A stretch of 64,000 bases of DNA, taken from positions 268,271 to 332,270 of IMG/VR virus record IMGVR_UViG_3300009703_004110; one strand, written 5' to 3'. Below are positions 3,455-49,466 of the stretch, piece by piece. The translations under genes and the position numbers were made by a program. A model generated the notes under the pieces. The model was not told the origin of the DNA. It worked only from the letters and a program-made list of their open reading frames with translations, and made no database searches. Each line of letters starts with the position of its first letter. Positions within the stretch are counted from its first letter, which is position 1.

Positions 3455-3974
3455 GCTTTCTCTCTTTTACTTTCTTTCGTTTTAATTTTCCGAGAGCCGA
3501 TTTATTAGGAACAGATATCATCTGTTCTTCATCAATCTGGTCACCAAAAGAATAGTCTGCTGGTATAGCATTACACCAACTTACTTCTTTCTCGGCAATG
3601 CGATTCCATCTTTTGACCTTTATTAAGTCGCCATGTTCTGCACCACGTACTTGCTCTATGTTTTCGAAAAGTCTGGTAATTCTATCTGAATTTAATGCAA
3701 ATATAGGATCATTCAAAATTACCACGGAGGCGTTTGTACCCTCTCTGACCATATGCTTTGAGCCGTACCACCCATTATATGTAACAGTGTGAACACAATG
3801 CGAATAGTTCGAGCCGGCACCCTTGGTGATAGAGGTGACAACGCCGACATACATATTTCGCTCGCCCTGCCCCGCCTTGCTATAGGCAATTACCTGTCCT
3901 CTGACAAGCTCATTCCCCATTATATCAAGTACAGGTTTCTCTGAGTTTACTAGTTCATATATTTCATCACTCAT
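3423..3974 (-). CDS. hypothetical protein (N-terminus D-x-x-G-x-E-x-x-x-G like 9175-9522)
   Basis: 183-aa ORF downstream of the promoter motif at 3981-4010. Confidence 0.65.
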   Translation of the reverse strand: MSDEIYELVNSEKPVLDIMGNELVRGQVIAYSKAGQGERNMYVGVVTSITKGAGSNYSHCVHTVTYNGWYGSKHMVREGTNASVVILNDPIFALNSDRITRLFENIEQVRGAEHGDLIKVKRWNRIAEKEVSWCNAIPADYSFGDQIDEEQMISVPNKSALGKLKRKKVKERKHVKEAQTKSS

Positions 3975-3980
3975 TTATAT

Positions 3981-4010
3981 ATTACCCTCAGCTTTTTCTT
4001 TTTATGTCAG
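3981..4010 (-). promoter_or_regulatory. putative phage promoter, class A motif
   Basis: CTGACA-TAAAAAGAAAAAGCTGAG-GGTAAT; the same 30-nt pattern occurs at 4 other intergenic sites. Confidence 0.65.
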
Positions 4011-4025
4011 GTTTATATTCTCAAA

Positions 4026-4207
4026 TGGTAGGGGTTAGAAGACTCGAACTTCTTTGCGCCATAATAGTCCAACTCCAACTTCATGTTGCATATCGATCGC
4101 TTTGCAACTTCCATTCTTGCTGAAAACGAGCCGCCACATCACCCGTTCCTAGGTTGGGTATTGCGCACACTCTTATGGTTCGTTTTACACATATAAACTA
4201 AACCCCT
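4026..4207 (-). ncRNA. tRNA-like RNA with an insert of about 110 nt replacing the anticodon loop
   Basis: acceptor AGGGGTT/AACCCCT+ACCA, D arm GTTT/AAAC, T arm AGAAG-TTCGAGT-CTTCT, CCATAA/TTATGG closing the insert. Confidence 0.7.
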
Positions 4208-4210
4208 CAA

Positions 4211-4285
4211 TGGAGCGGATAACTGGATTCGAACCAGCGACATTTACGTTGGCAACGTAATGCTCTACCACTGAGCTATATCCGC
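4211..4285 (-). tRNA. tRNA-Gly(GCC)
   Basis: cloverleaf, TTACG-TTGCCAA-CGTAA, CCA end. Confidence 0.95.
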
Positions 4286-4571
4286 AAATGGGCCAGTCCT
4301 CATTTCTTTTTAAGTCTGACTCACCGCCTTCTTAAAATACCAGATTAGCAGTATTCTAAGCAATTTGTTCTGGCCGCAACCCAGAACACCGCCTTTAGTA
4401 ATAATTTGTCCACTCCTGATCAAATTGGTGGGACACCGCCTTTTAAATTACAATACATATGTGAGGAAGATGTATCATGCGATTGGTTCATCGACAACGC
4501 TTTTTTAGCTGGCCTTGAACACACCGTCTATAAAAATATTAGCTTATCACATGACACACCTTCCTGTTTTA

Positions 4572-5750
4572 TTACTCTACAATACTGGTAACGTAACCGG
4601 CGCCGACAGTCTTGCCTCCCTCACGAATGGCAAAACGCATCTGCTCTTCCATACCAACAGGCTTCTGTAGACGGAAAGTAATATCCGCACGATCACCTGG
4701 GTTTACGATACCCACCTCTCCTACATCAATAGTACCAGTTACATCAGTAGTTCCGAAGAAAAACTGAGGACTGTAACCAGTTCCGAATGGACGGTGACGG
4801 CCGCCCTCGTCCTTAGTAAGAACAAGAACGTGAGCAGTTGCCTCAATGTGAGGAACAATAGCACCAGGAGCAGTAATTACCTGACCTCTCTGGACGCCAT
4901 CACGCTTCACACCACGAAGTAATAGACCAACGTTCATACCAGCTACTGCTGCATCAACATCCTTGTGGAAAGCCTGAGTACCAGTTACCACAGTGTCTTC
5001 GCCTTCGCTGTCAAGACCAACGATCTCAACCTTATCACCAACCCGTAGGGTTCCTCTTTCTACCTTGCCAGTAACTACGGTTCCACGACCCTTGATGTTA
5101 AATACATCTTCAATAGGCATCATGAAAGGAGAGTCATAGTCACGAGTAGGCTCAGGAATAGCATCCAAAGCTGTTACCAACTCTGTAATACAATTCAAAG
5201 CCTCGGCCTCGGCGTCTCCGGCGAGTGCGGCATTAAGAGCTTGTAGAGCGCTACCAAAGATAAAGGCCACATTGGTGTAACCATTGGACTCCAGTTGCTC
5301 TTCCACTTCCATCTCAACTAACTCAAGTAACTCAGGATCAGCTACGTCACACTTGTTAACGAAAACAACCATGTGCTCAACGCCGACCTGACGAGCCAAT
5401 AGAATGTGCTCAACGGTCTGCTTCTGTGGTCCTTGAGAACCATCGACAAGCAAGATTGCTCCATCCATCTGAGACGCGCCAGTAATCATGTTCTTGATAT
5501 AGTCAGCGTGACCCGGACAGTCAATGTGTGCATAGTGACGAGTGTCACTCTCGTATTCTACGTGAGAGGTATTAATGGTAATACCACGCTCCCTCTCTTC
5601 TTTGGCATTGTCAATCTCATCAAAAGACTTAGCCTTGCTTCCCTGCAATACTGCCTGTACCTGAGTAATAGCAGCAGTTAGAGTAGTCTTACCATGATCA
5701 ACGTGGCCGATGGTTCCTACATTTATATGGCACTTAGATTCTGTACTCAT
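4572..5750 (-). CDS. tuf: elongation factor Tu
   Basis: [25 protein letters not shown]; start reassigned to ATG 5750 (RBS, ATGA overlap with upstream HNH). Confidence 0.97.
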
Positions 5751-6316
5751 TTTATTTTCCCTCTTTCTATTGTTGTATATGAAATAATTTTTTTCATATG
5801 TTGAATCCACTCATCAAATGAATGAGAGCGCTTCATATAGTTGCAAGTTTTGCAACATATTTTAATATTGCTTAATACATACCCAACATCATTATTGGGT
5901 CTGTCAAGCCCTATTGTATCTATTTTTGAACCACAATATTCGCATGGTTTTTGCCACAAAGATTTAAACTCAATAAAAGATATACCAAATTTATATCCAC
6001 GTCTTTCAGCTTCGTTTTTATAAATAGTGTATTTACTGACCGGCGAATATCTGTGCCTATCTTTGCACGGTTTACAGTTGGGGTGATACCCATCCTTTCT
6101 GCTTGCTAATTTGTGATATTCAGCAATCGGTTTTTTAACATTACAATGCCCACAAACTTTTTCTGTTATAGCGGGCTTTGCCTTTGTTTTCATTTCTGAT
6201 TGAATTTTCTTTACGCAGTCCTTACATCTGGCCATCACACCCAATCGGCAAGTCTTGTTTTTATAAAACTCTGAAAGCTCTTTCACCTTACTACACTTAG
6301 TACATGTTTTCGTCAT
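5747..6316 (-). CDS. HNH-type homing endonuclease
   Basis: repeated CxxC..K...EFY modules, CEYCG..GLDRPNN..GY..SN...CCKTCN; AT-rich. Confidence 0.85.
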
Positions 6317-6358
6317 AATATATTCTCCTATAACGATTGTACCAAATAACTTTAGGAA

Positions 6359-6628
6359 CTATTGATTAATTTTAATCCCAAAATCTTGATCATTCTCTGA
6401 GGCTTTTAAGATCTCTATGAATGCATCAATATCTTCTTTACTAGGTGTATAGTCATCGCTACCAATATTTACAACAGTCACAGAAGATAAGTCCATAAGT
6501 GCGGCTAGTAAAATTTTTTCTCTAAGTGGGACACCATTACCATCTGTGTACGGTGAAGCTCTAGACCAGATGCGATCACCTGTCGCATCAAGCCTTCTGC
6601 TGATTTCACATACATTCCGGTCTAACAC
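6359..6628 (-). CDS. hypothetical protein
   Basis: 89-aa ORF in gene-dense orientation. Confidence 0.5.
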   Translation of the reverse strand: MLDRNVCEISRRLDATGDRIWSRASPYTDGNGVPLREKILLAALMDLSSVTVVNIGSDDYTPSKEDIDAFIEILKASENDQDFGIKINQ

Positions 6629-6872
6629 GTCAGAATATATTAGATATAGAATTGTTAGTGACGACTATTCGTGCAGGCATATCATTGACCTGCCCTTCCC
6701 AGATAACTTTCGGATATTCGCTCATTATCTCTCCATATAAATAATCCTAACATAGCTTTTTAAGACTACATCAGGACATTGAATCAAGACCTCTCCATTA
6801 CTAGATAGACAACGCTAACCAACTCAGCGCAAAAGAGTGTAAGTCTATAGTGGGTATTTCTACCGTCTTGAA

Positions 6873-6984
6873 TGAAGTCACCAAAGGGACTCGAACCCTC
6901 GATCTCAAACGGGGGAGGTCCACCCATCGATCGCGCCCAACCAATAGCCCCTTCCTCTCAGGACTAAAGACACCTGCTGATGAC
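6873..6984 (-). ncRNA. tRNA-like RNA with a non-canonical expanded core
   Basis: acceptor GTCATCA/TGGTGAC, T arm GAGGG-TTCGAGT-CCCTT, 3' TTCA; no canonical anticodon arm. Confidence 0.55.
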
Positions 6985-6992
6985 ATAAAAAT

Positions 6993-7119
6993 AGGGTGCG
7001 TTTTGTTGTAACGGTGTCCTACCATTAGACGATCACCCCATAAGATGGTGGGGCGAGTGGGATTCGAACCACACATTACCGGCTTTTCATGCTTAACTTT
7101 GGATTGCTGTTTACACCCT
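6993..7119 (-). ncRNA. circularly permuted tRNA-like RNA (YrlA/Y RNA-like architecture)
   Basis: order is T arm, 3' acceptor strand+ACCA, TCTTA loop, 5' acceptor strand, D arm; ends paired AGGGTGT/GCACCCT. Confidence 0.75.
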
Positions 7120-7121
7120 TA

Positions 7122-7197
7122 TGGCGGACTGTGGGGGTTACGATCCCCGTACTTCAGCGTGACAGGCCGATGTGTTACCAATTACACCACACAGTCC
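7122..7197 (-). tRNA. tRNA-Asp(GTC)
   Basis: TCGGC-CTGTCAC-GCTGA, GCCA end; variant T loop ATCGTAA. Confidence 0.9.
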
Positions 7198-7414
7198 ATA
7201 TTATCTTGCGCCTATTAATTTTTCAATACAGGCTTCTAACTCTTCTTCTTTCATCTTTTTAATGCCATGTTGTGTTCCTTGGGAGTATCTCCCAAGCGAC
7301 GATCCCATTTGCAATGAGCCATATCACAACCATGATAACAAAAGCTATCAGAGCATGGTCCCATCCACTTATCTCGTTCTTCTGAGACTATCTTATATTG
7401 TTCAGATGGGAACT

Positions 7415-7780
7415 TCATATGTTCTCCTTAATTTGAAATAATGCATTTATCCATTCCGGTGTAATACCCCTAGAGAATACTACCCATCCTATGACATTAT
7501 CTTCATCAATTAAAGCTCTCGCTTCTTCCATTGATTTACCAGTTGTTAAAACATCATCAACTATTAAAAAAGGCAACTTTGAATTTTCAGGTATAACATG
7601 AGCCTTTGCTAATGGTGTACCACCAGTTGGTACCCCATATACGCCTCTAAAGTTTTGATACTCGGAAATCATATATGCCAAAGTTTTCCAATCTTCATCA
7701 GTTAGGGCATCACACTCTATCTTCCAGCCAGCTAAACGTCCGGCATATGTAGTAAACTTTTTTCTTTCAAAGAGCGGCAT
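7415..7780 (-). CDS. type I phosphoribosyltransferase-like protein
   Basis: PRPP-binding motif LIVDDVLTTGKS, GVPTGG. Confidence 0.8.
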   Translation of the reverse strand: MPLFERKKFTTYAGRLAGWKIECDALTDEDWKTLAYMISEYQNFRGVYGVPTGGTPLAKAHVIPENSKLPFLIVDDVLTTGKSMEEARALIDEDNVIGWVVFSRGITPEWINALFQIKENI

Positions 7781-8078
7781 TTAGTCTTTCTCTCCAACCA
7801 ACTACAAATTCTTCTCCGTATGTATCACGAATAATAAACTCCAATTTATTGATTGTTCGATCAAGCTTCCAATTATGCTTAGTAGCATTTTTCAGAAAAT
7901 GAATCCAGTCTGGCATCATACCGTGTTCTTTTAGGGACCATACAATTGTTTCGAGATCAATCCCTTTCTCGCTTACAAATCTAAATGCGCCTCTTACAAT
8001 CTTTATACCGTCGTCAGTTTCGCCCACAATTTCAAAATGAGGCTTTGTCTTTTTCTTTCTACCCATGACGACCCCCAA
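7767..8078 (-). CDS. hypothetical protein, weak resemblance to the AlaRS helical motif
   Basis: GAFRFVSEKGIDLE..PDW..F resembles AFKLYDTYGFP..VD..GF. Confidence 0.5.
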   Translation of the reverse strand: MGVVMGRKKKTKPHFEIVGETDDGIKIVRGAFRFVSEKGIDLETIVWSLKEHGMMPDWIHFLKNATKHNWKLDRTINKLEFIIRDTYGEEFVVGWRERLNAAL

Positions 8079-8260
8079 GGATCGTACTTTGGATAGAGGT
8101 TAGGCTGCTTCCCGCTGTGTCATAACTTCTCCCTATCTAAAATTTTAGTCGCCAAAAACTCCCGGGCTTCTGTCGTGGCGGTCGATGCTGGGTCTCTCAC
8201 CCATCCAATTGAATCCCTTAATTTACCCCGGTAATGAGCACCTGCTTTCGCAGACTAAAA

Positions 8261-8335
8261 TGGTAGCCGATGACGGATTCGAACCGCCGACCTTCGCTTT
8301 GTAAAAGCGACACTCTCCCGCTGAGTTAATCGGCC
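8261..8335 (-). tRNA. tRNA-Val(TAC)
   Basis: TCGCT-TTTACAA-AGCGA, ACCA end. Confidence 0.93.
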
Positions 8336-8384
8336 AGATACCATGATTTCTATTTCTACTAATAATACCAAAAGAAAGCAATTT

Positions 8385-9140
8385 TTAATTATCTATTTTT
8401 TCTTGGCCCCAATACCATGTGCTATGCGACTCTGCCTTGAACCGCTCTTTGCTTTTGCTATTTATATGATTAATTCTTTCGTTGTATAGATATTCTAAGT
8501 AACCCTTTGGATCTCTTCGACTATTATAACTTCTACCGGTAGTAGAAACTTTAGTAATGCCGCCTAGAACCATTGGCAAAACATTTTCTGGACAATTATT
8601 TATTGTATAGGTTATTACCTCTACGTTTTTTGATCTTGCAATAATATCCCATGCGCTGCCAGGAAGGTTGCCGGCTGCTAAGTTTCTATGAACCCAATCG
8701 CCATTACTTCCTGATGTAGCGTACGTCTTTATATAATATAGCTTACCCGAATCTGGTAGCAAATCTTTATCTAACGCCCTTATTGCAACACCCTTTCTAA
8801 ACTCGGAAGAAAAGCCAAAGCCTCTCTTCTTTGCCGCAAGGAATAGCTTATCCAAATAAGCCCTACAAACATCGGGATGAGAATCTAGCATTCTTGAGAA
8901 CATATCTAAGAATAGCCGCGAAGCACCATAGTGACCAGTGTCAGCTAGTAAGCCCTTGCGAATTAGAAAGTCTACACCAGGATCTTCTGGAACTTTCCAA
9001 TCATGCTTTAAGCTAATTTCCTTAGGAAAAGAATCAGTTAGTATCTTTGCGTCTTTCATCTCTCTAATGCCGATCATTAAGACCGCATTTATATTATCTA
9101 ACTGATCTTGCGTTAATTCAATAGATATTTTATCAGACAT
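8385..9140 (-). CDS. hypothetical helical protein (possible paralog of 21780-22505)
   Basis: 251 aa; segment INNCPENVLPMVLG resembles IERAPLDKLPFLLG. Confidence 0.65.
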   Translation of the reverse strand: MSDKISIELTQDQLDNINAVLMIGIREMKDAKILTDSFPKEISLKHDWKVPEDPGVDFLIRKGLLADTGHYGASRLFLDMFSRMLDSHPDVCRAYLDKLFLAAKKRGFGFSSEFRKGVAIRALDKDLLPDSGKLYYIKTYATSGSNGDWVHRNLAAGNLPGSAWDIIARSKNVEVITYTINNCPENVLPMVLGGITKVSTTGRSYNSRRDPKGYLEYLYNERINHINSKSKERFKAESHSTWYWGQEKIDN

Positions 9141-9174
9141 TCTTCCTCTTGTTATTCGGCTAATATGCCGAGCC

Positions 9175-9522
9175 TTACAATGCTTTGCATATGAATCCTG
9201 ACGGCATCTTTTCGTTTTTTAATGCAAACTTTAAAATTGCAATTATAGAGGCACGGAAAGAAGCGTGAGAACCTTTTGGTATTTCATCTATTATATAGAG
9301 CTGTTGCTCCGATCGTTTTAAATTATGAGCCCTTCCGCTTTCAAAAATAAAGGTATTATTTATGTAATCGTATTTACCTGTTGCGGTGATGACTCTTAAT
9401 GACTTTGCATTTATTTTGGTAATTATAGCTGGATGATATGAGCAATTAGTTCTGCCCATAGCACCTTCAAGGTATAAGACTATATCACCTACTTGGATTT
9501 CTCTTCCAGTTACATCAGTCAT
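9175..9522 (-). CDS. hypothetical protein
   Basis: 115 aa, MTDVTGREIQVGDIV N-terminus typical of small phage proteins. Confidence 0.65.
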   Translation of the reverse strand: MTDVTGREIQVGDIVLYLEGAMGRTNCSYHPAIITKINAKSLRVITATGKYDYINNTFIFESGRAHNLKRSEQQLYIIDEIPKGSHASFRASIIAILKFALKNEKMPSGFICKAL

Positions 9523-9533
9523 GCTACTTCCTA

Positions 9534-9630
9534 TGGAGGCAGGCTGGGAGTCGAACCACGAGCAGCATAGGGTATGAACCTAGCCAGCCCAATCCCGAAG
9601 GATAACCGGGGCTATTAAGCTTTTCCTGCA
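9534..9630 (-). tRNA. atypical tRNA (CAT anticodon) with an inserted UUCG hairpin in the D region
   Basis: TAGG-TTCATAC-CCTA arm, TTCGACT T loop with a weak stem, GCAGG/CCTGC acceptor, TCCA end. Confidence 0.55.
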
Positions 9631-9667
9631 TGGAAGCGGGTGCCAGAATTGAACTGATTCACCCACT
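9631..9667 (-). ncRNA. tRNA minihelix (acceptor stem plus T arm only)
   Basis: AGTGGGTG-AA-TCAG-TTCAATT-CTGG-CACCCGCT-TCCA. Confidence 0.6.
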
Positions 9668-9671
9668 ATAA

Positions 9672-10283
9672 CTATTTAAAATTATACTTAGCCTTAATCT
9701 CCAAATCAAGAGACGGTATACGAATATGCTGAATCATTCCGTGACTCTTTGCTTCTTCAGGAGTCAGCCACCAATCTGCGTGACCGCGATTGTGAGTCTC
9801 GGTTAGAAAATGCTCTTCATCTTTGCCACAGTTTCTTGCCATTCTTCTGTATACAAGCTGGTTAAGTCTTTCGGTTTCTGCGGCACCAGCTTTTATTTCC
9901 TCAACCTTACCCCATTCCATACTTGAAACATCATGAATTAAGACAGTACTATTGGGTCCGGCAAAACGCATACCATCCTGCCCACAAGTCAAGAGGATAG
10001 CTCCACAACTCATAGCCTTACCTTCAACAATTGTTGCTACAGGCAAAGAGGCTGACTTAATACAATCCATCATAGCAAGCAAAGAATATACTTGGCCGCC
10101 ATATGAGTCAATTACAATTGGGATAACAGGCTGCCCTGTGCCATGAGCCTCTTCCATACTTTCAGTAAATTTCTTAACCGCATCTTCATTAAATTTATTA
10201 ACGCGGATAATTACCGGAGGTATAACCAAATCTTTTGGCTTACGTACAGTTAAAAGAGGGTCAATCTTGCAGGTCGCTCTCAT
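9672..10283 (-). CDS. clpP: ClpP-like serine protease
   Basis: IDSYGG, AMSCGA (catalytic Ser), LIHD, WWLTPEEA. Confidence 0.9.
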   Translation of the reverse strand: MRATCKIDPLLTVRKPKDLVIPPVIIRVNKFNEDAVKKFTESMEEAHGTGQPVIPIVIDSYGGQVYSLLAMMDCIKSASLPVATIVEGKAMSCGAILLTCGQDGMRFAGPNSTVLIHDVSSMEWGKVEEIKAGAAETERLNQLVYRRMARNCGKDEEHFLTETHNRGHADWWLTPEEAKSHGMIQHIRIPSLDLEIKAKYNFK

Positions 10284-11705: not shown

Positions 11706-11781
11706 TGGTAGCTCTGGTGGGAGTCGAACCCACACTGTAGCGGTTTTAAGCCGCTTGTCTCTGCCGTTGGACTACAGAGCC
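11706..11781 (-). tRNA. tRNA-Leu(TAA), short variable loop
   Basis: AGCGG-CTTAAAA-CCGCT, ACCA end. Confidence 0.9.
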
Positions 11782-35305: not shown

Positions 35306-35381
35306 TGGCACGCTGTAAGGGATTCGAACCCTTGACGCGGAGGTCTAGAATCTCCCGCTCTGACCGCTGAGCTAACAGCGC
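35306..35381 (-). tRNA. amber suppressor tRNA (anticodon CTA)
   Basis: canonical 76-nt numbering gives GGAGA-TTCTAGA-CCTCC; A31-C39 mismatch, G73, CCA end. Confidence 0.85.
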
Positions 35382-35460: not shown

Positions 35461-35835
35461 TTACTGAAGGCTTGCCGCATACAGCGCTGTCTTGGCTGAG
35501 TAGTTGCTGTTTGAAAGTGCCCAACTTCTCATCCAATCCCAATCACCCATCACATAGGCAGAGAATTGAGTTTCAGAAAGGTCAATCTCTGTGTCTACAG
35601 ACATTTCCTGCATTCGGATAATTCTATCGAAGGTTTTGACATGTGATTGCAGTTCTGCTAAGCTAAATTGCATATTAACTTTTTCGCCATTCTCTAGTTG
35701 GCGCAGCTTCTTCATTAAAATTCTCTTGGACTCTCGACGATAGCCCTCCATCACCTCTTCATACATTTCGATGTGCTCTTCTCGGTTAGTTCTTAGCGCC
35801 TCAAGAACATCTTTTCTTAATACTGTTACATTCAT
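35461..35835 (-). CDS. hypothetical protein
   Basis: 124-aa helical ORF. Confidence 0.65.
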   Translation of the reverse strand: MNVTVLRKDVLEALRTNREEHIEMYEEVMEGYRRESKRILMKKLRQLENGEKVNMQFSLAELQSHVKTFDRIIRMQEMSVDTEIDLSETQFSAYVMGDWDWMRSWALSNSNYSAKTALYAASLQ

Positions 35836-39932: not shown

Positions 39933-40544
39933 TTATGCTAGCTCCTCGTAAAGAGCCTCGTCATTTCTGCATCTTTTACGTAGTTCAGTATACCAAGCTT
40001 GATTCTTAACTTTGAACATTAAGACGCCAGGCTTCTTTGGATGCTTGGCTTTGCATACTACGCCTTCGAATGTCATCCCCGGTAACGTACCGTTTCTAAC
40101 TTGCTCTAAGAACGTGGCATTCGGCTTACCTCTATAGAGCATAGGTGCTATATCTAAATGTCCAAACAGCTTTAAGAATTCTTTGGGCGGAACCATTCCG
40201 CTCTTAAATAGATTGGCATCAAACAAGACTATTTGATGCTCTTCGGTATTGTCGTGCCATCCAAAAGATGAACTCTCTCCAAAGAATTCAAAGAACAATA
40301 CGACTTTATCGAGCCGTTGTTTTCTCATGATCTTGGAAACATCATCTTCGTACTTATTTCGGATAAGACCTATGGCTTCACCAAAGGTTTCGTCGTCTGC
40401 ACCAAGCATTCTCTTGCGAGTGCCAAACTTATAGAAGCCACGCTTCTTTGACCATTCGGCTCTGATGTTGGAACCATCTAATTTGTCAAAGGCATAAACA
40501 TCAAGATTAGATATCTCGCCTGTTATTGATGGATACTGTTTCAT
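39933..40544 (-). CDS. RNA ligase-like nucleotidyltransferase (Rnl2-type core)
   Basis: KLDGSN, EFFG, FD, EGVV, KVK. Confidence 0.75.
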   Translation of the reverse strand: MKQYPSITGEISNLDVYAFDKLDGSNIRAEWSKKRGFYKFGTRKRMLGADDETFGEAIGLIRNKYEDDVSKIMRKQRLDKVVLFFEFFGESSSFGWHDNTEEHQIVLFDANLFKSGMVPPKEFLKLFGHLDIAPMLYRGKPNATFLEQVRNGTLPGMTFEGVVCKAKHPKKPGVLMFKVKNQAWYTELRKRCRNDEALYEELA

Positions 40545-43933: not shown

Positions 43934-44275
43934 TTAGTCTATATCATCCCAAGACTTACCTTTCTCAAAAAACCATTTTTGCCTTACTCTTATAAAATCA
44001 AACGGACGCTCTATCGTCACGCCCATATCAAGCAATCTAAGATCTGCTACAAACTGCGCAGCTTCTGGAGTATAATACTCAACCTCATCGGCAATCCACT
44101 TGAAATCTGAAAAATCATAGTAATTATATTTCCAAGTTTCTTTTATCAAATTGTCCGTTTCATAAACCTCAACTACAGTATGTGATCTAGGTATACCATT
44201 CAAAGTTGCCTTTCTTATGATAATGGGATAAGCATCAGCAAAGTCTTTATCTTTAATTTCCCATGCAGTTATCAT
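43934..44275 (-). CDS. hypothetical protein
   Basis: 113 aa. Confidence 0.55.
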   Translation of the reverse strand: MITAWEIKDKDFADAYPIIIRKATLNGIPRSHTVVEVYETDNLIKETWKYNYYDFSDFKWIADEVEYYTPEAAQFVADLRLLDMGVTIERPFDFIRVRQKWFFEKGKSWDDID

Positions 44276-45009
44276 TAGTTTCTTCTATTAAGAATCTTTT
44301 CGACTAACCGCCGAGTAAAATTGTGACCAGCAAAGTATCCAAGCTTGAGAGTCTGCTCACCAAAAACTACGCGCACAACAGTCTCGCCATCATGGACGCG
44401 ACCATCAGTTACAACTCTTACAGGTCTATATTTGGTATCTTCCGCGCGAATGATGACTTCTGTGGTGCCCGGCAAAACAACAGATCTAAAGTTAGGGTGG
44501 TGTGCGTTGTTAGGCGTAACAACCATATTCTTATTCAGCGGGTGAATAACTGGACCTCCCGCAGAAAAATTATAACCTGTTGAACCAAGCGGTGTTGCTA
44601 CAATAACTCCGTCAGCTACCATCTTTTGAACCAATGACGCACCATCAACTGCAACAGAAATTCTAGCAGTTTGTCCCGATGCTCTTTCGATATAAACGTC
44701 GTTAATTGCGAAGTCAGTCTTGCCGCTTCCAAATTGCGCTTCAAGTGTATGAAACCCTTGAACAGTCCATTCCTGATAACGAATCCCATCCTTAATATCT
44801 GTAGATTCATTCATAAGGAAGCCAAGATGGCCGCCGTTAATAGGTATATAGGTTTTATCAAGCCCATGCTTGCTTGCCGATCCCAAGAGATATCCGTCTC
44901 CTCCAACGACAACAATAATATCTTTGCTTTCGATCAATTCTTCATCAGCCCAATTAAATACAGCTTTTGCCATACTCTTTGCATTAGGACTTTTTCCAAC
45001 TACAATCAT
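44275..45009 (-). CDS. nadK: NAD kinase
   Basis: GGDG, G.LGFL, ND, DG....TP.GSTGYN.SAGG; start trimmed to 45009. Confidence 0.92.
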   Translation of the reverse strand: MIVVGKSPNAKSMAKAVFNWADEELIESKDIIVVVGGDGYLLGSASKHGLDKTYIPINGGHLGFLMNESTDIKDGIRYQEWTVQGFHTLEAQFGSGKTDFAINDVYIERASGQTARISVAVDGASLVQKMVADGVIVATPLGSTGYNFSAGGPVIHPLNKNMVVTPNNAHHPNFRSVVLPGTTEVIIRAEDTKYRPVRVVTDGRVHDGETVVRVVFGEQTLKLGYFAGHNFTRRLVEKILNRRN

Positions 45010-45034: not shown

Positions 45035-45167
45035 TGGTCGTGTCGCAGAGGATTCGAACCTACATTGACCCGGCGATTAAACCCGGGAATGTCCAAGTGA
45101 TAGAGGGCACGCAGAGAGACTTGCTAATCGCAGCAAGATCATTTACCATTTTCACTACACGTCACGA
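45035..45167 (-). ncRNA. tRNA-like RNA with an expanded multi-hairpin core
   Basis: TCGTG/CACGA+CCA, AGG-TTCGAAT-CCT, D-loop-like AATGGTAAA, hairpins CTTGCT/AGCAAG and CCCGG/CCGGG. Confidence 0.6.
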
Positions 45168-45171
45168 TATA

Positions 45172-45200
45172 TGGTAGGAAGTCTGAGATTCGAACTTCCA
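45172..45200 (-). pseudogene. 3' tRNA fragment
   Basis: GTTCGAATC...GACTTCCTACCA; the 5' part is replaced by the HNH upstream region. Confidence 0.55.
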
Positions 45201-45241
45201 GTTTTCTATTACTATTCTACCTATAAATATAGGAGATCGTT

Positions 45242-45883
45242 ATGAAAATTTTAAATTGTAATAAATGTAATAAAGAATTTGAAAGGCGCACAGGAGAATA
45301 TAACCAAGCTATTAGGCGTGGTTATAGGCGTTTTTATTGCTCTAATGAATGTCGAAAGACTCACTGTAAAAAGATTACTAAGATAAATATATCTTGTACA
45401 AATTGTGATACTATATTCCAAAGGCGTCCGCGAGACATTGAAAAGTCTAACACAGGGCGCTTCTTTTGTTCACGAAGTTGCGCAGCTACTTACAATAACA
45501 AACTTAATCCAAAAAGAATAGCGCGACACAGAATTTGCCCAGAGTGTCTTAATAAATTTAAAGGGCAAAATAAATATTGTAGCGCCGAATGCATACCTAA
45601 AAAATCAAAAGAAGAATATAAAAGCGACCATAGAAATAATGTTTCTAACTTAAGAAAGAGAATGAAAGAAAAGGCTATATCTCTTATGGGCGGTGAGTGC
45701 CAGATTTGCAAATACAACAAGTGTTCTCGCGCCTTGCATTTTCACCATATAAATCCGGAAGAAAAAGACTTTAATATATCTCTTGCATCAAGCTGGGAAA
45801 AGGCGAAGTCTGAACTTGATAAGTGTGTTTTATTGTGCGCGAACTGTCATGCCGAAGTTCACGATGGACTTATTGATATATAA
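45242..45883 (+). CDS. HNH homing endonuclease
   Basis: CxxC..F..CS..C repeats, GGECQIC..ALHFHH..P..K, LLCANCHAEVH. Confidence 0.9.
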   Translation: MKILNCNKCNKEFERRTGEYNQAIRRGYRRFYCSNECRKTHCKKITKINISCTNCDTIFQRRPRDIEKSNTGRFFCSRSCAATYNNKLNPKRIARHRICPECLNKFKGQNKYCSAECIPKKSKEEYKSDHRNNVSNLRKRMKEKAISLMGGECQICKYNKCSRALHFHHINPEEKDFNISLASSWEKAKSELDKCVLLCANCHAEVHDGLIDI

Positions 45884-45888
45884 TATAA

Positions 45889-45964
45889 TGGTAGAGTACC
45901 TTGGATTCGAACCAAGAACGCCGACGTCACAGGACGGAATGATAACCAATTTCAACAATACTCC
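45889..45964 (-). tRNA. tRNA-His(GTG) with A73 and no encoded G-1
   Basis: CCGTC-CTGTGAC-GTCGG; GGAGTAT/GTACTCT-A-CCA; base -1 is T. Confidence 0.85.
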
Positions 45965-48943: not shown

Positions 48944-49389
48944 GCCGTTACCTGCAAGATATCAAGATAGAACAAAATACTTTCCTTGTCTTTATTACCA
49001 AAAGCGATATCAATCACATGGTATCGGTCTGTCAGTCGAATGGAGTATTGATCGCCCTTTAGAAATAACATTAGAGTTGCCAAATATTACTCGGCTGCCG
49101 TCTCTACTCGGTCTTAATATAACATTAGAAGTTCCAACCCAAAAATCAAGGGACTTTTGCAAATGATTGTCAAAGAGTCAATCTCTACAAGCCTCTCCGC
49201 AAATCTGATATAATCACCCGGGCTATAGCTATTTACTGAACCACTAATCACTTCGGCATGTGTTCCACCAATCTGTGGGTGAATCTTACACTTACCTCTA
49301 CTGCACGGGTTCTTTGGCTTGCTATAGAAAAACTTTCGTAATATACTTCCTATAAGATCCATCGACCTTCCGTGCGGCTATATGTTAAA

Positions 49390-49466
49390 TGGCTGGGGTA
49401 GTAGGGTTCGAACCTACAAACCTTCCGGTTCAAAGCCGGATGCTCCACCAGTTGAGCTATACCCCA
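49390..49466 (-). tRNA. tRNA-Gln(TTG)
   Basis: T1-A72, TCCGG-CTTTGAA-CCGGA, GCCA end. Confidence 0.93.

What the first reader, a model, noticed from the sequence alone, without database searches (positions are those of the whole stretch)
45035..45167. Second expanded-core tRNA-like RNA
Seen: CCA end, TTCGAAT T loop, a D-loop-like AATGGTAAA and two extra hairpins, with no canonical anticodon arm. With the elements at 4026, 6873, 6993, 9534 and 9631 this makes at least six tRNA mimics that keep elbow or acceptor features but alter the core. This looks more like a repertoire than random decay (inference).
Basis: partly seen in the sequence, partly recalled or inferred. Interest (0 to 1): 0.6.

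Follow-up and report, generated by a model that had tools for sequence, protein, structure and literature searches.

The report
Conserved tRNA-like RNA in jumbo phage
A 132-base RNA gene in the tRNA cluster of a 332-kb marine phage keeps the top half of a tRNA but has a rebuilt lower half whose two long arms can pair at their tips; related phages conserve it, so it is a working non-coding RNA and not a decayed tRNA, but its function is unknown.

Summary
The element is real. It lies on the minus strand at 45166-45035, in the tRNA cluster of a 332-kb phage record. It has a 7-bp acceptor stem, a GGUUCGAAUCC T arm and an encoded ACCA end. ARAGORN and Rfam do not call it a tRNA. Three other distinct marine jumbo-phage contigs carry a homologue at the same place, after tRNA-His and upstream of an NAD-kinase gene. 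Their neighbouring protein is only 58-66% identical. Across the four sequences, seven helices are kept: 132 of 139 pair cells are paired and 18 of 35 pairs show compensatory double changes. The tips of the two extra hairpins are complementary in all four sequences, with a C-G to U-A swap in one. The supposed D loop, AAUGGUAAA, is in fact one strand of a conserved helix. There is no 7-nt anticodon loop and the genome uses the standard code. I read it as a non-decoding, tRNA-derived stable RNA matured like a tRNA. Its closest analogue in layout and context is T4 RNAC, but no sequence homology is detectable. The "repertoire" claim is only partly supported: the adjacent piece is a tRNA-His scar beside an HNH endonuclease gene, the element has no paralogue, and the other elements could not be tested.

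The parts
45160..45166 (-). 5' strand of the acceptor stem (7 nt); the U at 45167 could add a U-1:A73 pair
   Evidence: Pairs with 45039-45045. All seven positions vary among the four homologues while pairing is kept (26 of 28 cells paired).
45152..45156 (-). 5' strand of the D-stem equivalent (AGUGA)
   Evidence: Pairs with 45096-45100. Relatives have GGCGG/UCGUC, AACGG/UCGCU and GACAG/AUGUC.
45144..45147 (-).
   Evidence: Pairs with 45106-45109 (UGCC). Relatives have GUCG/CGAC, GUCA/UGAC and GGCG/CGUU.
45138..45143 (-). Conserved unpaired block AAUGAU (internal loop, 5' side)
   Evidence: AUGAU is invariant in the four sequences. It has no assigned partner.
45120..45137 (-). Hairpin 1: 6-bp stem with a 6-nt loop GCGAUU (loop at 45126-45131)
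   Evidence: The stem covaries: CUUGCU/AGCAAG, CUUGUU/AACAAG, CCUAUU/GAUAGG. The loop is complementary to the loop of hairpin 2.
45110..45119 (-). Conserved pyrimidine block UCUCUCUGCG (internal loop, 3' side)
   Evidence: U(C/U)UCUCU is nearly invariant. It has no assigned partner.
45106..45109 (-). 3' strand of inner helix H
   Evidence: An alternative pairing of this region with 45097-45100 was found by RNAalifold on the unbiased alignment.
45096..45100 (-). 3' strand of the D-stem equivalent (UCACU)
   Evidence: it is part of the minimum-free-energy fold.
45092..45095 (-). Invariant junction UGGA
   Evidence: Invariant in the four sequences.
45063..45091 (-). Hairpin 2, in the place of the anticodon arm: 4 bp, a UC bulge, 5 bp and a 9-nt loop GUUUAAUCG (loop at 45074-45082)
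   Evidence: The upper stem covaries: CCCGG/CCGGG, CCCUG/CAGGG, CCUG/CAGG. The lower CAUU/AAUG is invariant. The loop is 9 nt, not 7, and only UUAAUC is conserved.
45048..45062 (-). T arm: 3-4 bp stem plus the canonical loop UUCGAAU
   Evidence: Pair 50:64 is a mismatch in 3 of 4 sequences.
45035..45045 (-). 3' strand of the acceptor stem (45039-45045), discriminator A and CCA (45035-45038)
   Evidence: CCA is encoded here and in L004 but not in L008 or L002.
45171..45225 (-). Not part of the RNA family: a remnant (T arm, 3' acceptor, CCA) of the ancestral tRNA-His, 4 nt upstream of the element
   Evidence: Its last ~30 nt align with the 3' end of tRNA-His in L002, L004, L008 and L010, and the rest is unrelated.
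45242..45883 (+). HNH homing-endonuclease gene on the opposite strand, between the remnant and a different, complete tRNA-His (45889-45964, minus strand)
   Evidence: PHROG HNH endonuclease at 8.8e-25; Pfam HNH below its threshold; ARAGORN.
44275..45009 (-). Downstream NAD-kinase gene, the conserved neighbour used to find relatives
   Evidence: Pfam NAD_kinase_C at 2.4e-19; homologues.

Best explanation
The element is the gene of a tRNA-derived, non-decoding stable RNA of about 132 nt.

Shown: it keeps a tRNA-like upper half, meaning a 7-bp acceptor helix, a canonical T loop and a 3' A-CCA. The lower half is rebuilt. The D arm is replaced by a stack of three helices, about 62 nt long, that ends in hairpin 1. 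The anticodon arm is replaced by a 9-bp bulged stem with a 9-nt loop that abuts the T arm with no variable loop. All helices are maintained by compensatory substitutions in four phage lineages. The tip of hairpin 1, (C/U)GAUU, is complementary to the loop of hairpin 2, AAUC(G/A).

Inferred: it is transcribed with the tRNA cluster, originally right behind tRNA-His. It is probably cut out by RNase P at the 5' end. Where CCA is not encoded, it is probably finished by 3' trimming and CCA addition. The loop-loop pairing then closes the lower half, so the anticodon-like loop is not free for codon reading.

Most likely role (speculative): it acts as a tRNA-shaped ligand. It would present a tRNA elbow and acceptor end to a protein that recognises tRNA by shape, such as a host tRNA-targeting nuclease or sensor, or a processing, modifying or charging enzyme, without entering translation. 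In layout and genomic setting it is the counterpart of T4 RNAC (species 1 RNA), whose function is also unknown.
For: Conservation. Homologues were found by nhmmer and blastn at the same locus in L004 (83% identity), L008/L009 and L002/L003, where the flanking NAD kinase is only 58-66% identical. The covariance model scores them at 112-146 bits.

Structure. In the hand alignment, 132 of 139 pair cells are paired and 18 of 35 pairs show double compensatory changes. The alifold energy is far below 300 column shuffles (z -9.3, none reached it). RNAalifold on the unbiased MAFFT alignment independently recovers hairpin 1, hairpin 2 and the T arm, with 10 compensatory pairs. The window's own minimum-free-energy fold is this cloverleaf-like fold.

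Loop-loop pairing. There are 5 Watson-Crick pairs in all four sequences, with C-G replaced by U-A in L002. The contiguous complementarity runs 8-11 nt.

Not a decoder. ARAGORN and Rfam make no call. The loop has 9 nt and its second position varies between G and U. The standard code fits the genome, with ORFs of 450 nt or more covering 88% of it.

tRNA-type maturation is plausible. In L002 the element starts 6 nt after tRNA-His, and in the window 4 nt after the tRNA-His remnant. No terminator-like site lies nearby. The genome encodes a PolyA_pol/CCA-adding-family enzyme.

T4 analogue. RNAC (139 nt) lies in the T4 tRNA cluster, just after rnaD, which directly follows tRNA-Arg, with the SegB homing endonuclease gene in the same cluster. 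Its consensus fold has a terminal helix, a long arm, a 10-bp hairpin next to a canonical T arm, and invariant complementary tips UUGACG and CGUCAA. Its role is unknown (PMC3014915).
Against: Only four distinct sequences exist, so no formal covariation statistic such as R-scape is possible, and my structural alignment was fitted by hand to the model.

Transcription, ends and CCA status are therefore inferred.

Single-sequence folds are not more stable than shuffles.

An alternative local hairpin that uses the 3' D strand also shows compensatory changes. The tip complementarity extends into the stems. The RNA may therefore switch conformations, or the loops may pair between molecules instead.

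The element is absent at this locus in other relatives (L010, L011, L005-7, L014), so it is dispensable.

Nothing links it to any defence system or binding protein.

The covariance models find no homology with T4 RNAC.
Confidence: 0.6

Rival explanations
1. It is a working but highly unusual tRNA. It would be charged and used in translation, for example reading with UAA (Leu), or with UUA as an ochre suppressor, from the 9-nt loop.
For: It has an acceptor stem, a T loop, A73 and CCA. In the loop, U-U-A-A is conserved, and a 7-nt loop closed by a purine-purine pair would give U33 with anticodon UAA. The genome's tRNA set lacks Asn, Trp, Arg and Lys(UUU) and carries a suppressor-type tRNA(CUA).
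Against: The anticodon loop is not a 7-nt loop, the position that would be 37 is U, and there is no D loop with G18/G19 and no variable loop. The loop is complementary to hairpin 1 in all four sequences. The acceptor sequence is not conserved, so there is no fixed acceptor identity set. A normal tRNA-Leu(UAA) already exists at 11706-11781. The standard code fits the genome. None of the missing anticodons is conserved in the loop.
Confidence: 0.08
2. It is a decaying tRNA pseudogene or recombination debris, like its neighbour at 45171-45225.
For: Debris of tRNA genes does occur here next to a homing-endonuclease gene. Single-sequence folding energy is unremarkable. The element is missing in some relatives.
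Against: It is 75-83% identical across phages whose neighbouring protein is 58-66% identical. 18 pairs show compensatory double changes and only 7 of 139 cells are unpaired. Single-stranded blocks are invariant.
Confidence: 0.03
3. It is a cis-acting processing or regulatory module of the transcript. It would be a tRNA-like 'punctuation' signal that makes RNase P and 3' nucleases separate tRNA-His from the downstream mRNA, or a leader that controls the NAD-kinase gene, possibly by switching between two folds.
For: It is always on the coding strand, between tRNA-His and the next gene, 15-25 nt before the NAD-kinase start in the window and L008. No terminator lies between them. Alternative pairings exist. 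The window's pyrimidine block UCUCUCU is complementary to the purine-rich ribosome-binding region GAGAGA upstream of the start.
Against: In L002 another ORF (75 aa) lies between the element and the NAD-kinase gene. The purine-rich ribosome-binding region is not seen downstream in L004. A plain minihelix would be enough for RNase P, so the elaborate conserved core is not explained. The encoded CCA end argues for a released RNA.
Confidence: 0.12
4. The two complementary loops pair between molecules, as in phi29 pRNA, or with another RNA. The RNA would then work as a dimer, an oligomer or an antisense partner.
For: The loop complementarity is conserved with one compensatory swap. Sequence alone cannot tell pairing within one molecule from pairing between molecules.
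Against: No other pRNA feature is present. The two loops sit on arms of one molecule that are long enough to meet. No target with the same motif was looked for beyond the element itself.
Confidence: 0.07

Closest known systems
Bacteriophage T4 RNAC (species 1 RNA) and RNAD, small stable RNAs of the T4 tRNA cluster
   Same: Both are encoded in a phage tRNA cluster close behind a tRNA, with a homing-endonuclease gene in the cluster (PMC2330249). Sizes are similar, 139 and 132 nt. The layout is shared: a terminal helix, a long arm in place of the D arm, a hairpin of about 10 bp directly 5' of a canonical GGUUCGAAUCC T arm, and complementary tips of the long arm and the hairpin. In T4 the RNAs are made from the tRNA precursor transcript (PMC2330249). 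The function of RNAC is unknown (PMC3014915, PMC9697503).
   Different: No sequence homology is detectable. The model of this family scores RNAC at 18.6 bits, the level of ordinary tRNAs, and the RNAC model does not find the element at all. In RNAC both complementary tips are invariant, so there is no covariation for the contact. The RNAC terminal helix is interrupted and no CCA is encoded. The hosts and phage groups differ: Tevenvirinae against uncultured marine jumbo phages.
Canonical tRNA (Rfam RF00005)
   Same: Both have a 7-bp acceptor stem, the T loop UUCGAAU, the discriminator with CCA, a four-way junction and a location in a tRNA cluster. Canonical tRNAs match the family model weakly over its whole length (12-24 bits), consistent with descent from a tRNA.
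   Different: There is no D loop with G18/G19, no 5-bp/7-nt anticodon arm and no variable loop. About 60 nt are extra. ARAGORN and Rfam do not call it.
Bacterial Y-RNA-like YrlA, tRNA-like module
   Same: Both are non-coding RNAs that mimic the tRNA acceptor, T arm and D region, and YrlA also occurs in some phages (PMC4201824).
   Different: In YrlA the 5' and 3' ends form the Ro-binding stem, not a CCA acceptor (from my knowledge of the family). There is no Rfam YrlA match here. I did not look for a Ro/Rsr gene in this genome.
tmRNA tRNA-like domain
   Same: Both combine an acceptor and T arm with a non-canonical D region, and a long helix stands in the anticodon position.
   Different: ARAGORN and Rfam make no tmRNA call. 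There is no conserved G3:U70. The AUG-started frame inside the element is 21, 11 and 5 codons long in three homologues and runs on into the next gene in L004, so there is no conserved tag (my reading of the sequences). At 132 nt it is about half the size of the smallest usual tmRNAs.
phi29 pRNA
   Same: Both have two hairpin loops with conserved mutual complementarity.
   Different: pRNA has no acceptor, T arm or CCA, its loops pair between molecules on the portal, and it belongs to small podoviruses (from my knowledge; not tested here).

Membership tests
Canonical tRNA | 7-bp acceptor stem with discriminator and CCA | tested here: met
   45166-45160 pairs with 45045-45039 (one A.A mismatch), followed by A and CCA. 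Pairing is kept in all four homologues.
Canonical tRNA | T arm: 5-bp stem and 7-nt loop UUCRANY | tested here: inconclusive
   The loop UUCGAAU is invariant. The stem has 3 G-C/A-U pairs and then a mismatch at 50:64 in 3 of 4 sequences.
Canonical tRNA | D arm: 3-4 bp stem and a loop with G18/G19 | tested here: not met
   A 5-bp stem encloses about 52 nt with two further helices. The GG of AAUGGUAAA is not conserved and lies in a helix.
Canonical tRNA | Anticodon arm: 5-bp stem, 7-nt loop with U33 and purine 37 | tested here: not met
   The stem is 4+5 bp with a bulge and the loop is 9 nt, R-K-U-U-A-A-U-C-R. There is no variable loop.
Canonical tRNA | Recognised by tRNA models | tested here: not met
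   ARAGORN with and without introns. Rfam at the gathering score and at E<=10.
T4 RNAC (species 1 RNA) family | Sequence and structure homology to rnaC of Tevenvirinae | tested here: not met
   The covariance model R2, built from five rnaC homologues, finds only ordinary tRNAs in the window and the relatives. R1 scores rnaC at 18.6 bits, in the tRNA range.
T4 RNAC (species 1 RNA) family | Context and layout: a stable-RNA gene of about 130-140 nt in a phage tRNA cluster, with a terminal helix, a long arm, a hairpin next to a T arm and complementary tips | tested here: met
   for T4. for this element.
tmRNA | G3:U70, a tag reading frame with a conserved stop, pseudoknots | tested here: not met
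   ARAGORN -m and Rfam find nothing. The acceptor pairs vary. The internal frame is not conserved (sequences).
YrlA / Y RNA | Ro-binding terminal stem and a tRNA-like module; a Ro (Rsr) gene nearby | tested here: not met
   No Rfam match at E<=10. No TROVE/Ro-family hit among the nine neighbouring genes scanned. The ends form a CCA acceptor.
tRNA gene remnant / pseudogene | No constraint on structure; a truncated or unpaired acceptor | tested here: not met
   Compensatory changes are seen in all helices and the acceptor is complete. By contrast, the neighbour at 45171-45225 does meet this definition.

The most novel reading that the evidence does not exclude
Phages of unrelated groups, T4-like phages and these marine jumbo phages, each carry a 'locked tRNA' in their tRNA clusters. 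This is an RNA that keeps the tRNA elbow and acceptor end, while a long arm folds back to pair with the anticodon-like loop. If this shared architecture reflects a shared job, it would give the 50-year-old orphan RNAC a testable function. One candidate job is a decoy or inhibitor for host enzymes that sense or cut tRNAs. Another is a shape-specific cofactor of a phage enzyme.
Probability: 0.2. Interest if true: 0.8.

Novelty: new variant of a known kind. Interest (0 to 1): 0.55.

Why it matters
Phage tRNA clusters have long been known to hold a few stable RNAs that are not tRNAs, and the role of the T4 examples is still unknown. This element adds an independent family, absent from Rfam, with a clear architecture supported by covariation. 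That architecture is a tRNA upper half joined to a lower half that closes on itself. The same design principle can be seen in T4 RNAC.

This gives a concrete structural hypothesis that can be tested by loop mutations and probing, and a second system in which to look for the binding partner. The work also shows that tRNA-like pieces in such clusters are a mixture. Some are conserved RNAs and some are scars of homing-endonuclease traffic, so each has to be judged by comparison and not by looks.

Tried and rejected
- **Intron-containing tRNA.** ARAGORN with introns of 0-300 nt found nothing. Removing the D-domain insertion would not restore a D loop or an anticodon arm.
- **Known RNA family.** Rfam gave no match at the gathering score or at E<=10. 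The other tRNA-like elements at 3900-9900 also gave nothing.
- **Alternative genetic code or suppressor role.** The standard code gives 88% coverage by long ORFs, and TAG ends 35 of 197 long ORFs.
- **Small ORF or tmRNA-like tag.** The AUG at 45142-45140 opens 21 codons here but 11 and 5 codons in L008 and L002, and it is fused to the next gene in L004. The 296-aa gene call there (P0006) is probably a miscall.
- **K-turn, C/D-box, hammerhead or hairpin-ribozyme cores.** By eye, the conserved blocks do not fit these consensus sequences.
- **Paralogues in the genome.** nhmmer with --max and the covariance model R1 found only the element itself plus T arms of tRNAs.
- **More relatives.**
  - IMG/VR scans by peptide patterns, by an alignment and by two DNA patterns found none.
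  - The metagenome pattern scan returned only the same phage (L013) and an unrelated tRNA.
  - The species-genome scan gave one chance match.
  - Four protein look-ups had no DNA available.
  - The records behind the loci are not held for whole-record search.
- **The count of structure pairs.** It was not used because MAFFT and the model-guided alignment misplace the acceptor and D strands by one column. The counts were made in a script on an alignment cut by segment lengths from the stored sequences.
- It was redone by reference.

Full report
**Where the window lies.** The window is the last 64 kb of a 332,270-bp IMG/VR virus record, estimated to be 99% complete. It is a jumbo phage. ARAGORN finds 25 tRNA genes in the genome, 20 of them in the window, and nearly all are on the minus strand and scattered among genes. 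The genes around the finding encode an amidase, an NAD kinase (44275-45009, minus), an HNH endonuclease (45242-45883, plus), a short HisRS-like class II synthetase fragment, an HD_4 hydrolase and an ArgRS-like protein. The standard genetic code fits the genome: ORFs of 450 nt or more cover 88% of it, and all three stop codons end long ORFs.

**Checking the observation.**
- Read on the minus strand, the element runs from 45166 to 45035.
- It has a 7-bp acceptor stem with one A.A mismatch, a perfect GGUUCGAAUCC T-arm core, the discriminator A and an encoded CCA.
- It also has two hairpins that a tRNA does not have.
- ARAGORN does not call it, with or without the intron option. Rfam has no match, even at E<=10.
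- Its minimum-free-energy fold is cloverleaf-like but is no more stable than shuffled sequence (z -0.6). The sequence alone therefore cannot show that it is more than chance.

**Relatives.** The downstream NAD kinase has homologues on large marine contigs, and I fetched their loci. The gene order (HD_4, HisRS-like gene, small ORFs, tRNA-His, NAD kinase, amidase) is shared.
- A homologue of the element lies on the same strand, between tRNA-His and the NAD-kinase gene, in L004, in L008 (identical in L009) and in L002 (identical in L003).
- L013, from a 391-kb JGI contig, is identical to the window.
- The element is 75-83% identical across these phages, while the kinase is 58-66% identical.
- It is missing at this locus in L010, L011, L005-7 and L014.
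- It is single-copy in the genome.
- No further members were found in IMG/VR, in the JGI metagenome collection or in 185,579 species genomes with the patterns used.

**Structure.** I cut the four sequences into homologous segments and counted pairs. Seven helices are kept:
- the acceptor stem;
- a 5-bp stem in the D-stem position;
- an inner 4-bp helix;
- hairpin 1 (6 bp);
- a lower 4-bp stem and an upper 5-bp stem of hairpin 2, separated by a UC bulge;
- the T stem.

Of 139 pair cells, 132 are standard pairs, and 18 of the 35 pairs show changes on both sides that keep the pair. RNAalifold on this alignment returns the same helices, at an energy that none of 300 column shuffles reached (z -9.3). 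That alignment was fitted by hand, which favours the model. On the purely sequence-based MAFFT alignment, RNAalifold still recovers hairpin 1, hairpin 2 and the T arm, with 10 compensatory pairs.

Its GGUA pairs with UGCC at 45109-45106, and the relatives have GUCG/CGAC, GUCA/UGAC and GGCG/CGUU at the same place.

**A contact between the two hairpin tips.** The loop of hairpin 1 reads (C/U)GAUU and the loop of hairpin 2 reads AAUC(G/A).
- The two are complementary over 5 Watson-Crick pairs in all four sequences. L002 has changed the C-G pair to U-A.
- Contiguous complementarity, with G-U allowed, runs 8, 11, 8 and 8 nt. That reaches into the stems, and in L004 the minimum-free-energy fold forms it as a duplex.
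- Shuffles of the two hairpins reach these lengths in 4-7% of trials for three sequences and in 0.1% for L004. The case rests on the four occurrences in the same register together with the compensatory swap.

I read this as a kissing contact that closes the lower half of the molecule. Pairing between molecules, or a switch between hairpins and a long duplex, cannot be excluded. A second ambiguity is that the 3' strand of the D-like stem can also pair locally with the region of the inner helix, again with compensatory changes.

**What it is not.**
- It is not a decaying pseudogene, given the conservation described above.
- It is very unlikely to be a decoding tRNA:
  - the loop in the anticodon position has 9 nt and its second position varies;
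  - no reading gives U33, a conserved anticodon and a purine at 37 together;
  - there is no variable loop;
  - the acceptor sequence is free to vary;
  - the genome needs no recoding.
- It is not a tmRNA. ARAGORN and Rfam make no call, there is no conserved G3:U70, and the frame opened by the AUG at 45142-45140 differs in length in every homologue.
- It matches no Rfam family.

**How it probably works.**
- Shown: a conserved four-way-junction RNA with a tRNA upper half and a rebuilt, self-complementary lower half.
- Inferred:
  - It is transcribed with the tRNA cluster. In L002 it starts 6 nt after tRNA-His, and in the window 4 nt after the remnant of the old tRNA-His.
  - A sigma-70-like site lies at 45255-45226, and no terminator-like site follows.
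  - RNase P probably releases its 5' end. Where CCA is not encoded (L008, L002), a CCA-adding enzyme probably completes it.
  - The phage encodes a PolyA_pol-family nucleotidyltransferase and two RNA ligases, and no RtcB.
- Speculative: with its anticodon-like loop occupied, it would serve as a tRNA-shaped ligand, that is, a decoy, competitor or cofactor for a protein that reads the tRNA elbow and acceptor end. I found no evidence that points to a particular partner.

**Comparison with what is known.** The nearest known case is T4 RNAC (species 1 RNA).
- In T4 the 139-nt rnaC and the 119-nt rnaD lie just downstream of tRNA-Arg, and the SegB homing-endonuclease gene sits in the same cluster.
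- They come from the same primary transcript as the tRNAs (PMC2330249).
- Their roles are unknown (PMC3014915, PMC9697503).
- I aligned rnaC from T4 and four diverged Tevenvirinae. The consensus fold has a terminal helix, a long arm, and a 10-bp hairpin one base before a canonical T arm, and 18 of 47 pairs are compensatory.
- The tip of the long arm (UUGACG) and the loop of the hairpin (CGUCAA) are complementary. Both are invariant while the stems change.

The layout and the tip-to-tip complementarity therefore recur. Homology is not detectable: the two covariance models do not find each other's family above the level of ordinary tRNAs. I file the element as a new family that works like, but is not a member of, the RNAC kind.

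**The "repertoire" idea.** The T-arm piece at 45171-45225 matches the last ~30 nt of the tRNA-His that the relatives carry at this spot. Everything 5' of its T arm has been replaced by the HNH gene on the opposite strand and by a different, complete tRNA-His. This is what a homing endonuclease that cuts at the T-arm motif of tRNA genes would leave behind, as shown for T4 SegB (PMC2330249).

Other tRNA-like pieces sit in intergenic gaps beside tRNAs:
- a 182-nt element with a perfect acceptor stem and T arm (4026-4207);
- a 112-nt element (6873-6984);
- a pair of half-molecules in permuted order (6995-7121), which ARAGORN accepts as a tRNA once they are joined in silico;
- a minihelix and another odd element (9534-9668).

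None has an Rfam match, and none is related to the element studied here. I could not fetch the corresponding regions of the relatives, so it stays open whether they are functional. The window therefore holds at least one conserved tRNA-like RNA and at least one scar, and the rest are undecided.

**Limits.** There are only four distinct sequences. No partner protein is known. 

Noticed in passing
window 45171-45225 (-), 45242-45883 (+), 45889-45964 (-): A remnant of the ancestral tRNA-His (T arm, 3' acceptor, CCA) lies next to an HNH endonuclease gene on the opposite strand and a different, complete tRNA-His. It looks like a scar of endonuclease-linked gene replacement with its breakpoint just 5' of the T arm, as known for T4 SegB (PMC2330249).
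   Followed up: yes
window 35306-35381 (-): A tRNA with anticodon CUA (amber-suppressor type; ARAGORN labels it Pyl) sits in a genome where TAG ends 35 of 197 long ORFs and the standard code fits. The 7-nt 5' acceptor sequence recurs about 100 nt upstream (35481-35487), which may be another fragment.
   Followed up: partly
window 4026-4207 (-): A 182-nt tRNA-like element lies directly after tRNA-Gly. It has a perfect 7-bp acceptor stem, a 5-bp T arm, ACCA and a 4-bp D-like stem, with about 110 nt of extra core. ARAGORN and Rfam find nothing.
   Followed up: partly
window 6995-7121 (-): A T arm, 3' acceptor strand and CCA (7041-7121) lie upstream of a 5' acceptor strand, D arm and anticodon-like hairpin (6995-7040), and the acceptor strands match. 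ARAGORN calls a tRNA when the two are joined in silico in the usual order (69 junction choices). This is either a circularly permuted tRNA gene or debris of tandem copies. An AUCCAAA motif (anticodon CCA, Trp) lies at about 7095, and the genome lacks a canonical tRNA-Trp.
   Followed up: partly
window 6873-6984 (-) and 9534-9668 (-): There is a 112-nt element with a 7-bp acceptor stem and a T arm that ends UUCA. There is also a minihelix of about 38 nt (acceptor and T arm only, UCCA) at 9631-9668, followed by another odd tRNA-like element at 9534-9630. The T-loop regions at 7060 and 9547 fit an 8-nt loop better than a 7-nt loop.
   Followed up: no
window 49373-49449 (+): ARAGORN's only plus-strand call, tRNA-Arg(TCG), overlaps tRNA-Gln(TTG) on the minus strand (49390-49466). 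Rfam supports only the minus-strand gene, so the plus-strand call is a mirror artefact. The genome thus has no canonical tRNA for Arg, Asn or Trp.
   Followed up: partly
G000 179355-179723; 256105-256554; window 40005-40499: The phage encodes a PolyA_pol-family (CCA-adding-type) nucleotidyltransferase and two PF09414 RNA ligases. Together with several truncated aminoacyl-tRNA-synthetase-like genes and an HD_4 hydrolase in the window, this amounts to a tRNA maturation and repair toolkit.
   Followed up: partly
L016 1909-2047 (T4 rnaC) and L018-L021: In T4 RNAC and its relatives, the tip of the long arm (UUGACG) and the loop of the hairpin next to the T arm (CGUCAA) are complementary. Both are invariant while the stems covary. 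In Enterobacter phage PG7 the 3' 95 nt are annotated as a tRNA-Met.
   Followed up: partly
L004 6001-6891: The 296-aa NAD-kinase gene call (P0006) starts at the AUG inside the RNA element. The extra ~40 residues at the N terminus are probably an annotation artefact.
   Followed up: no
L014 11204-11300: A more distant relative carries a tRNA-like gene of about 95 nt (7-bp acceptor, T arm, UCCA, loop CUUGAAA) that ARAGORN misses. It is not a member of the family studied here (17.7 bits with R1).
   Followed up: no
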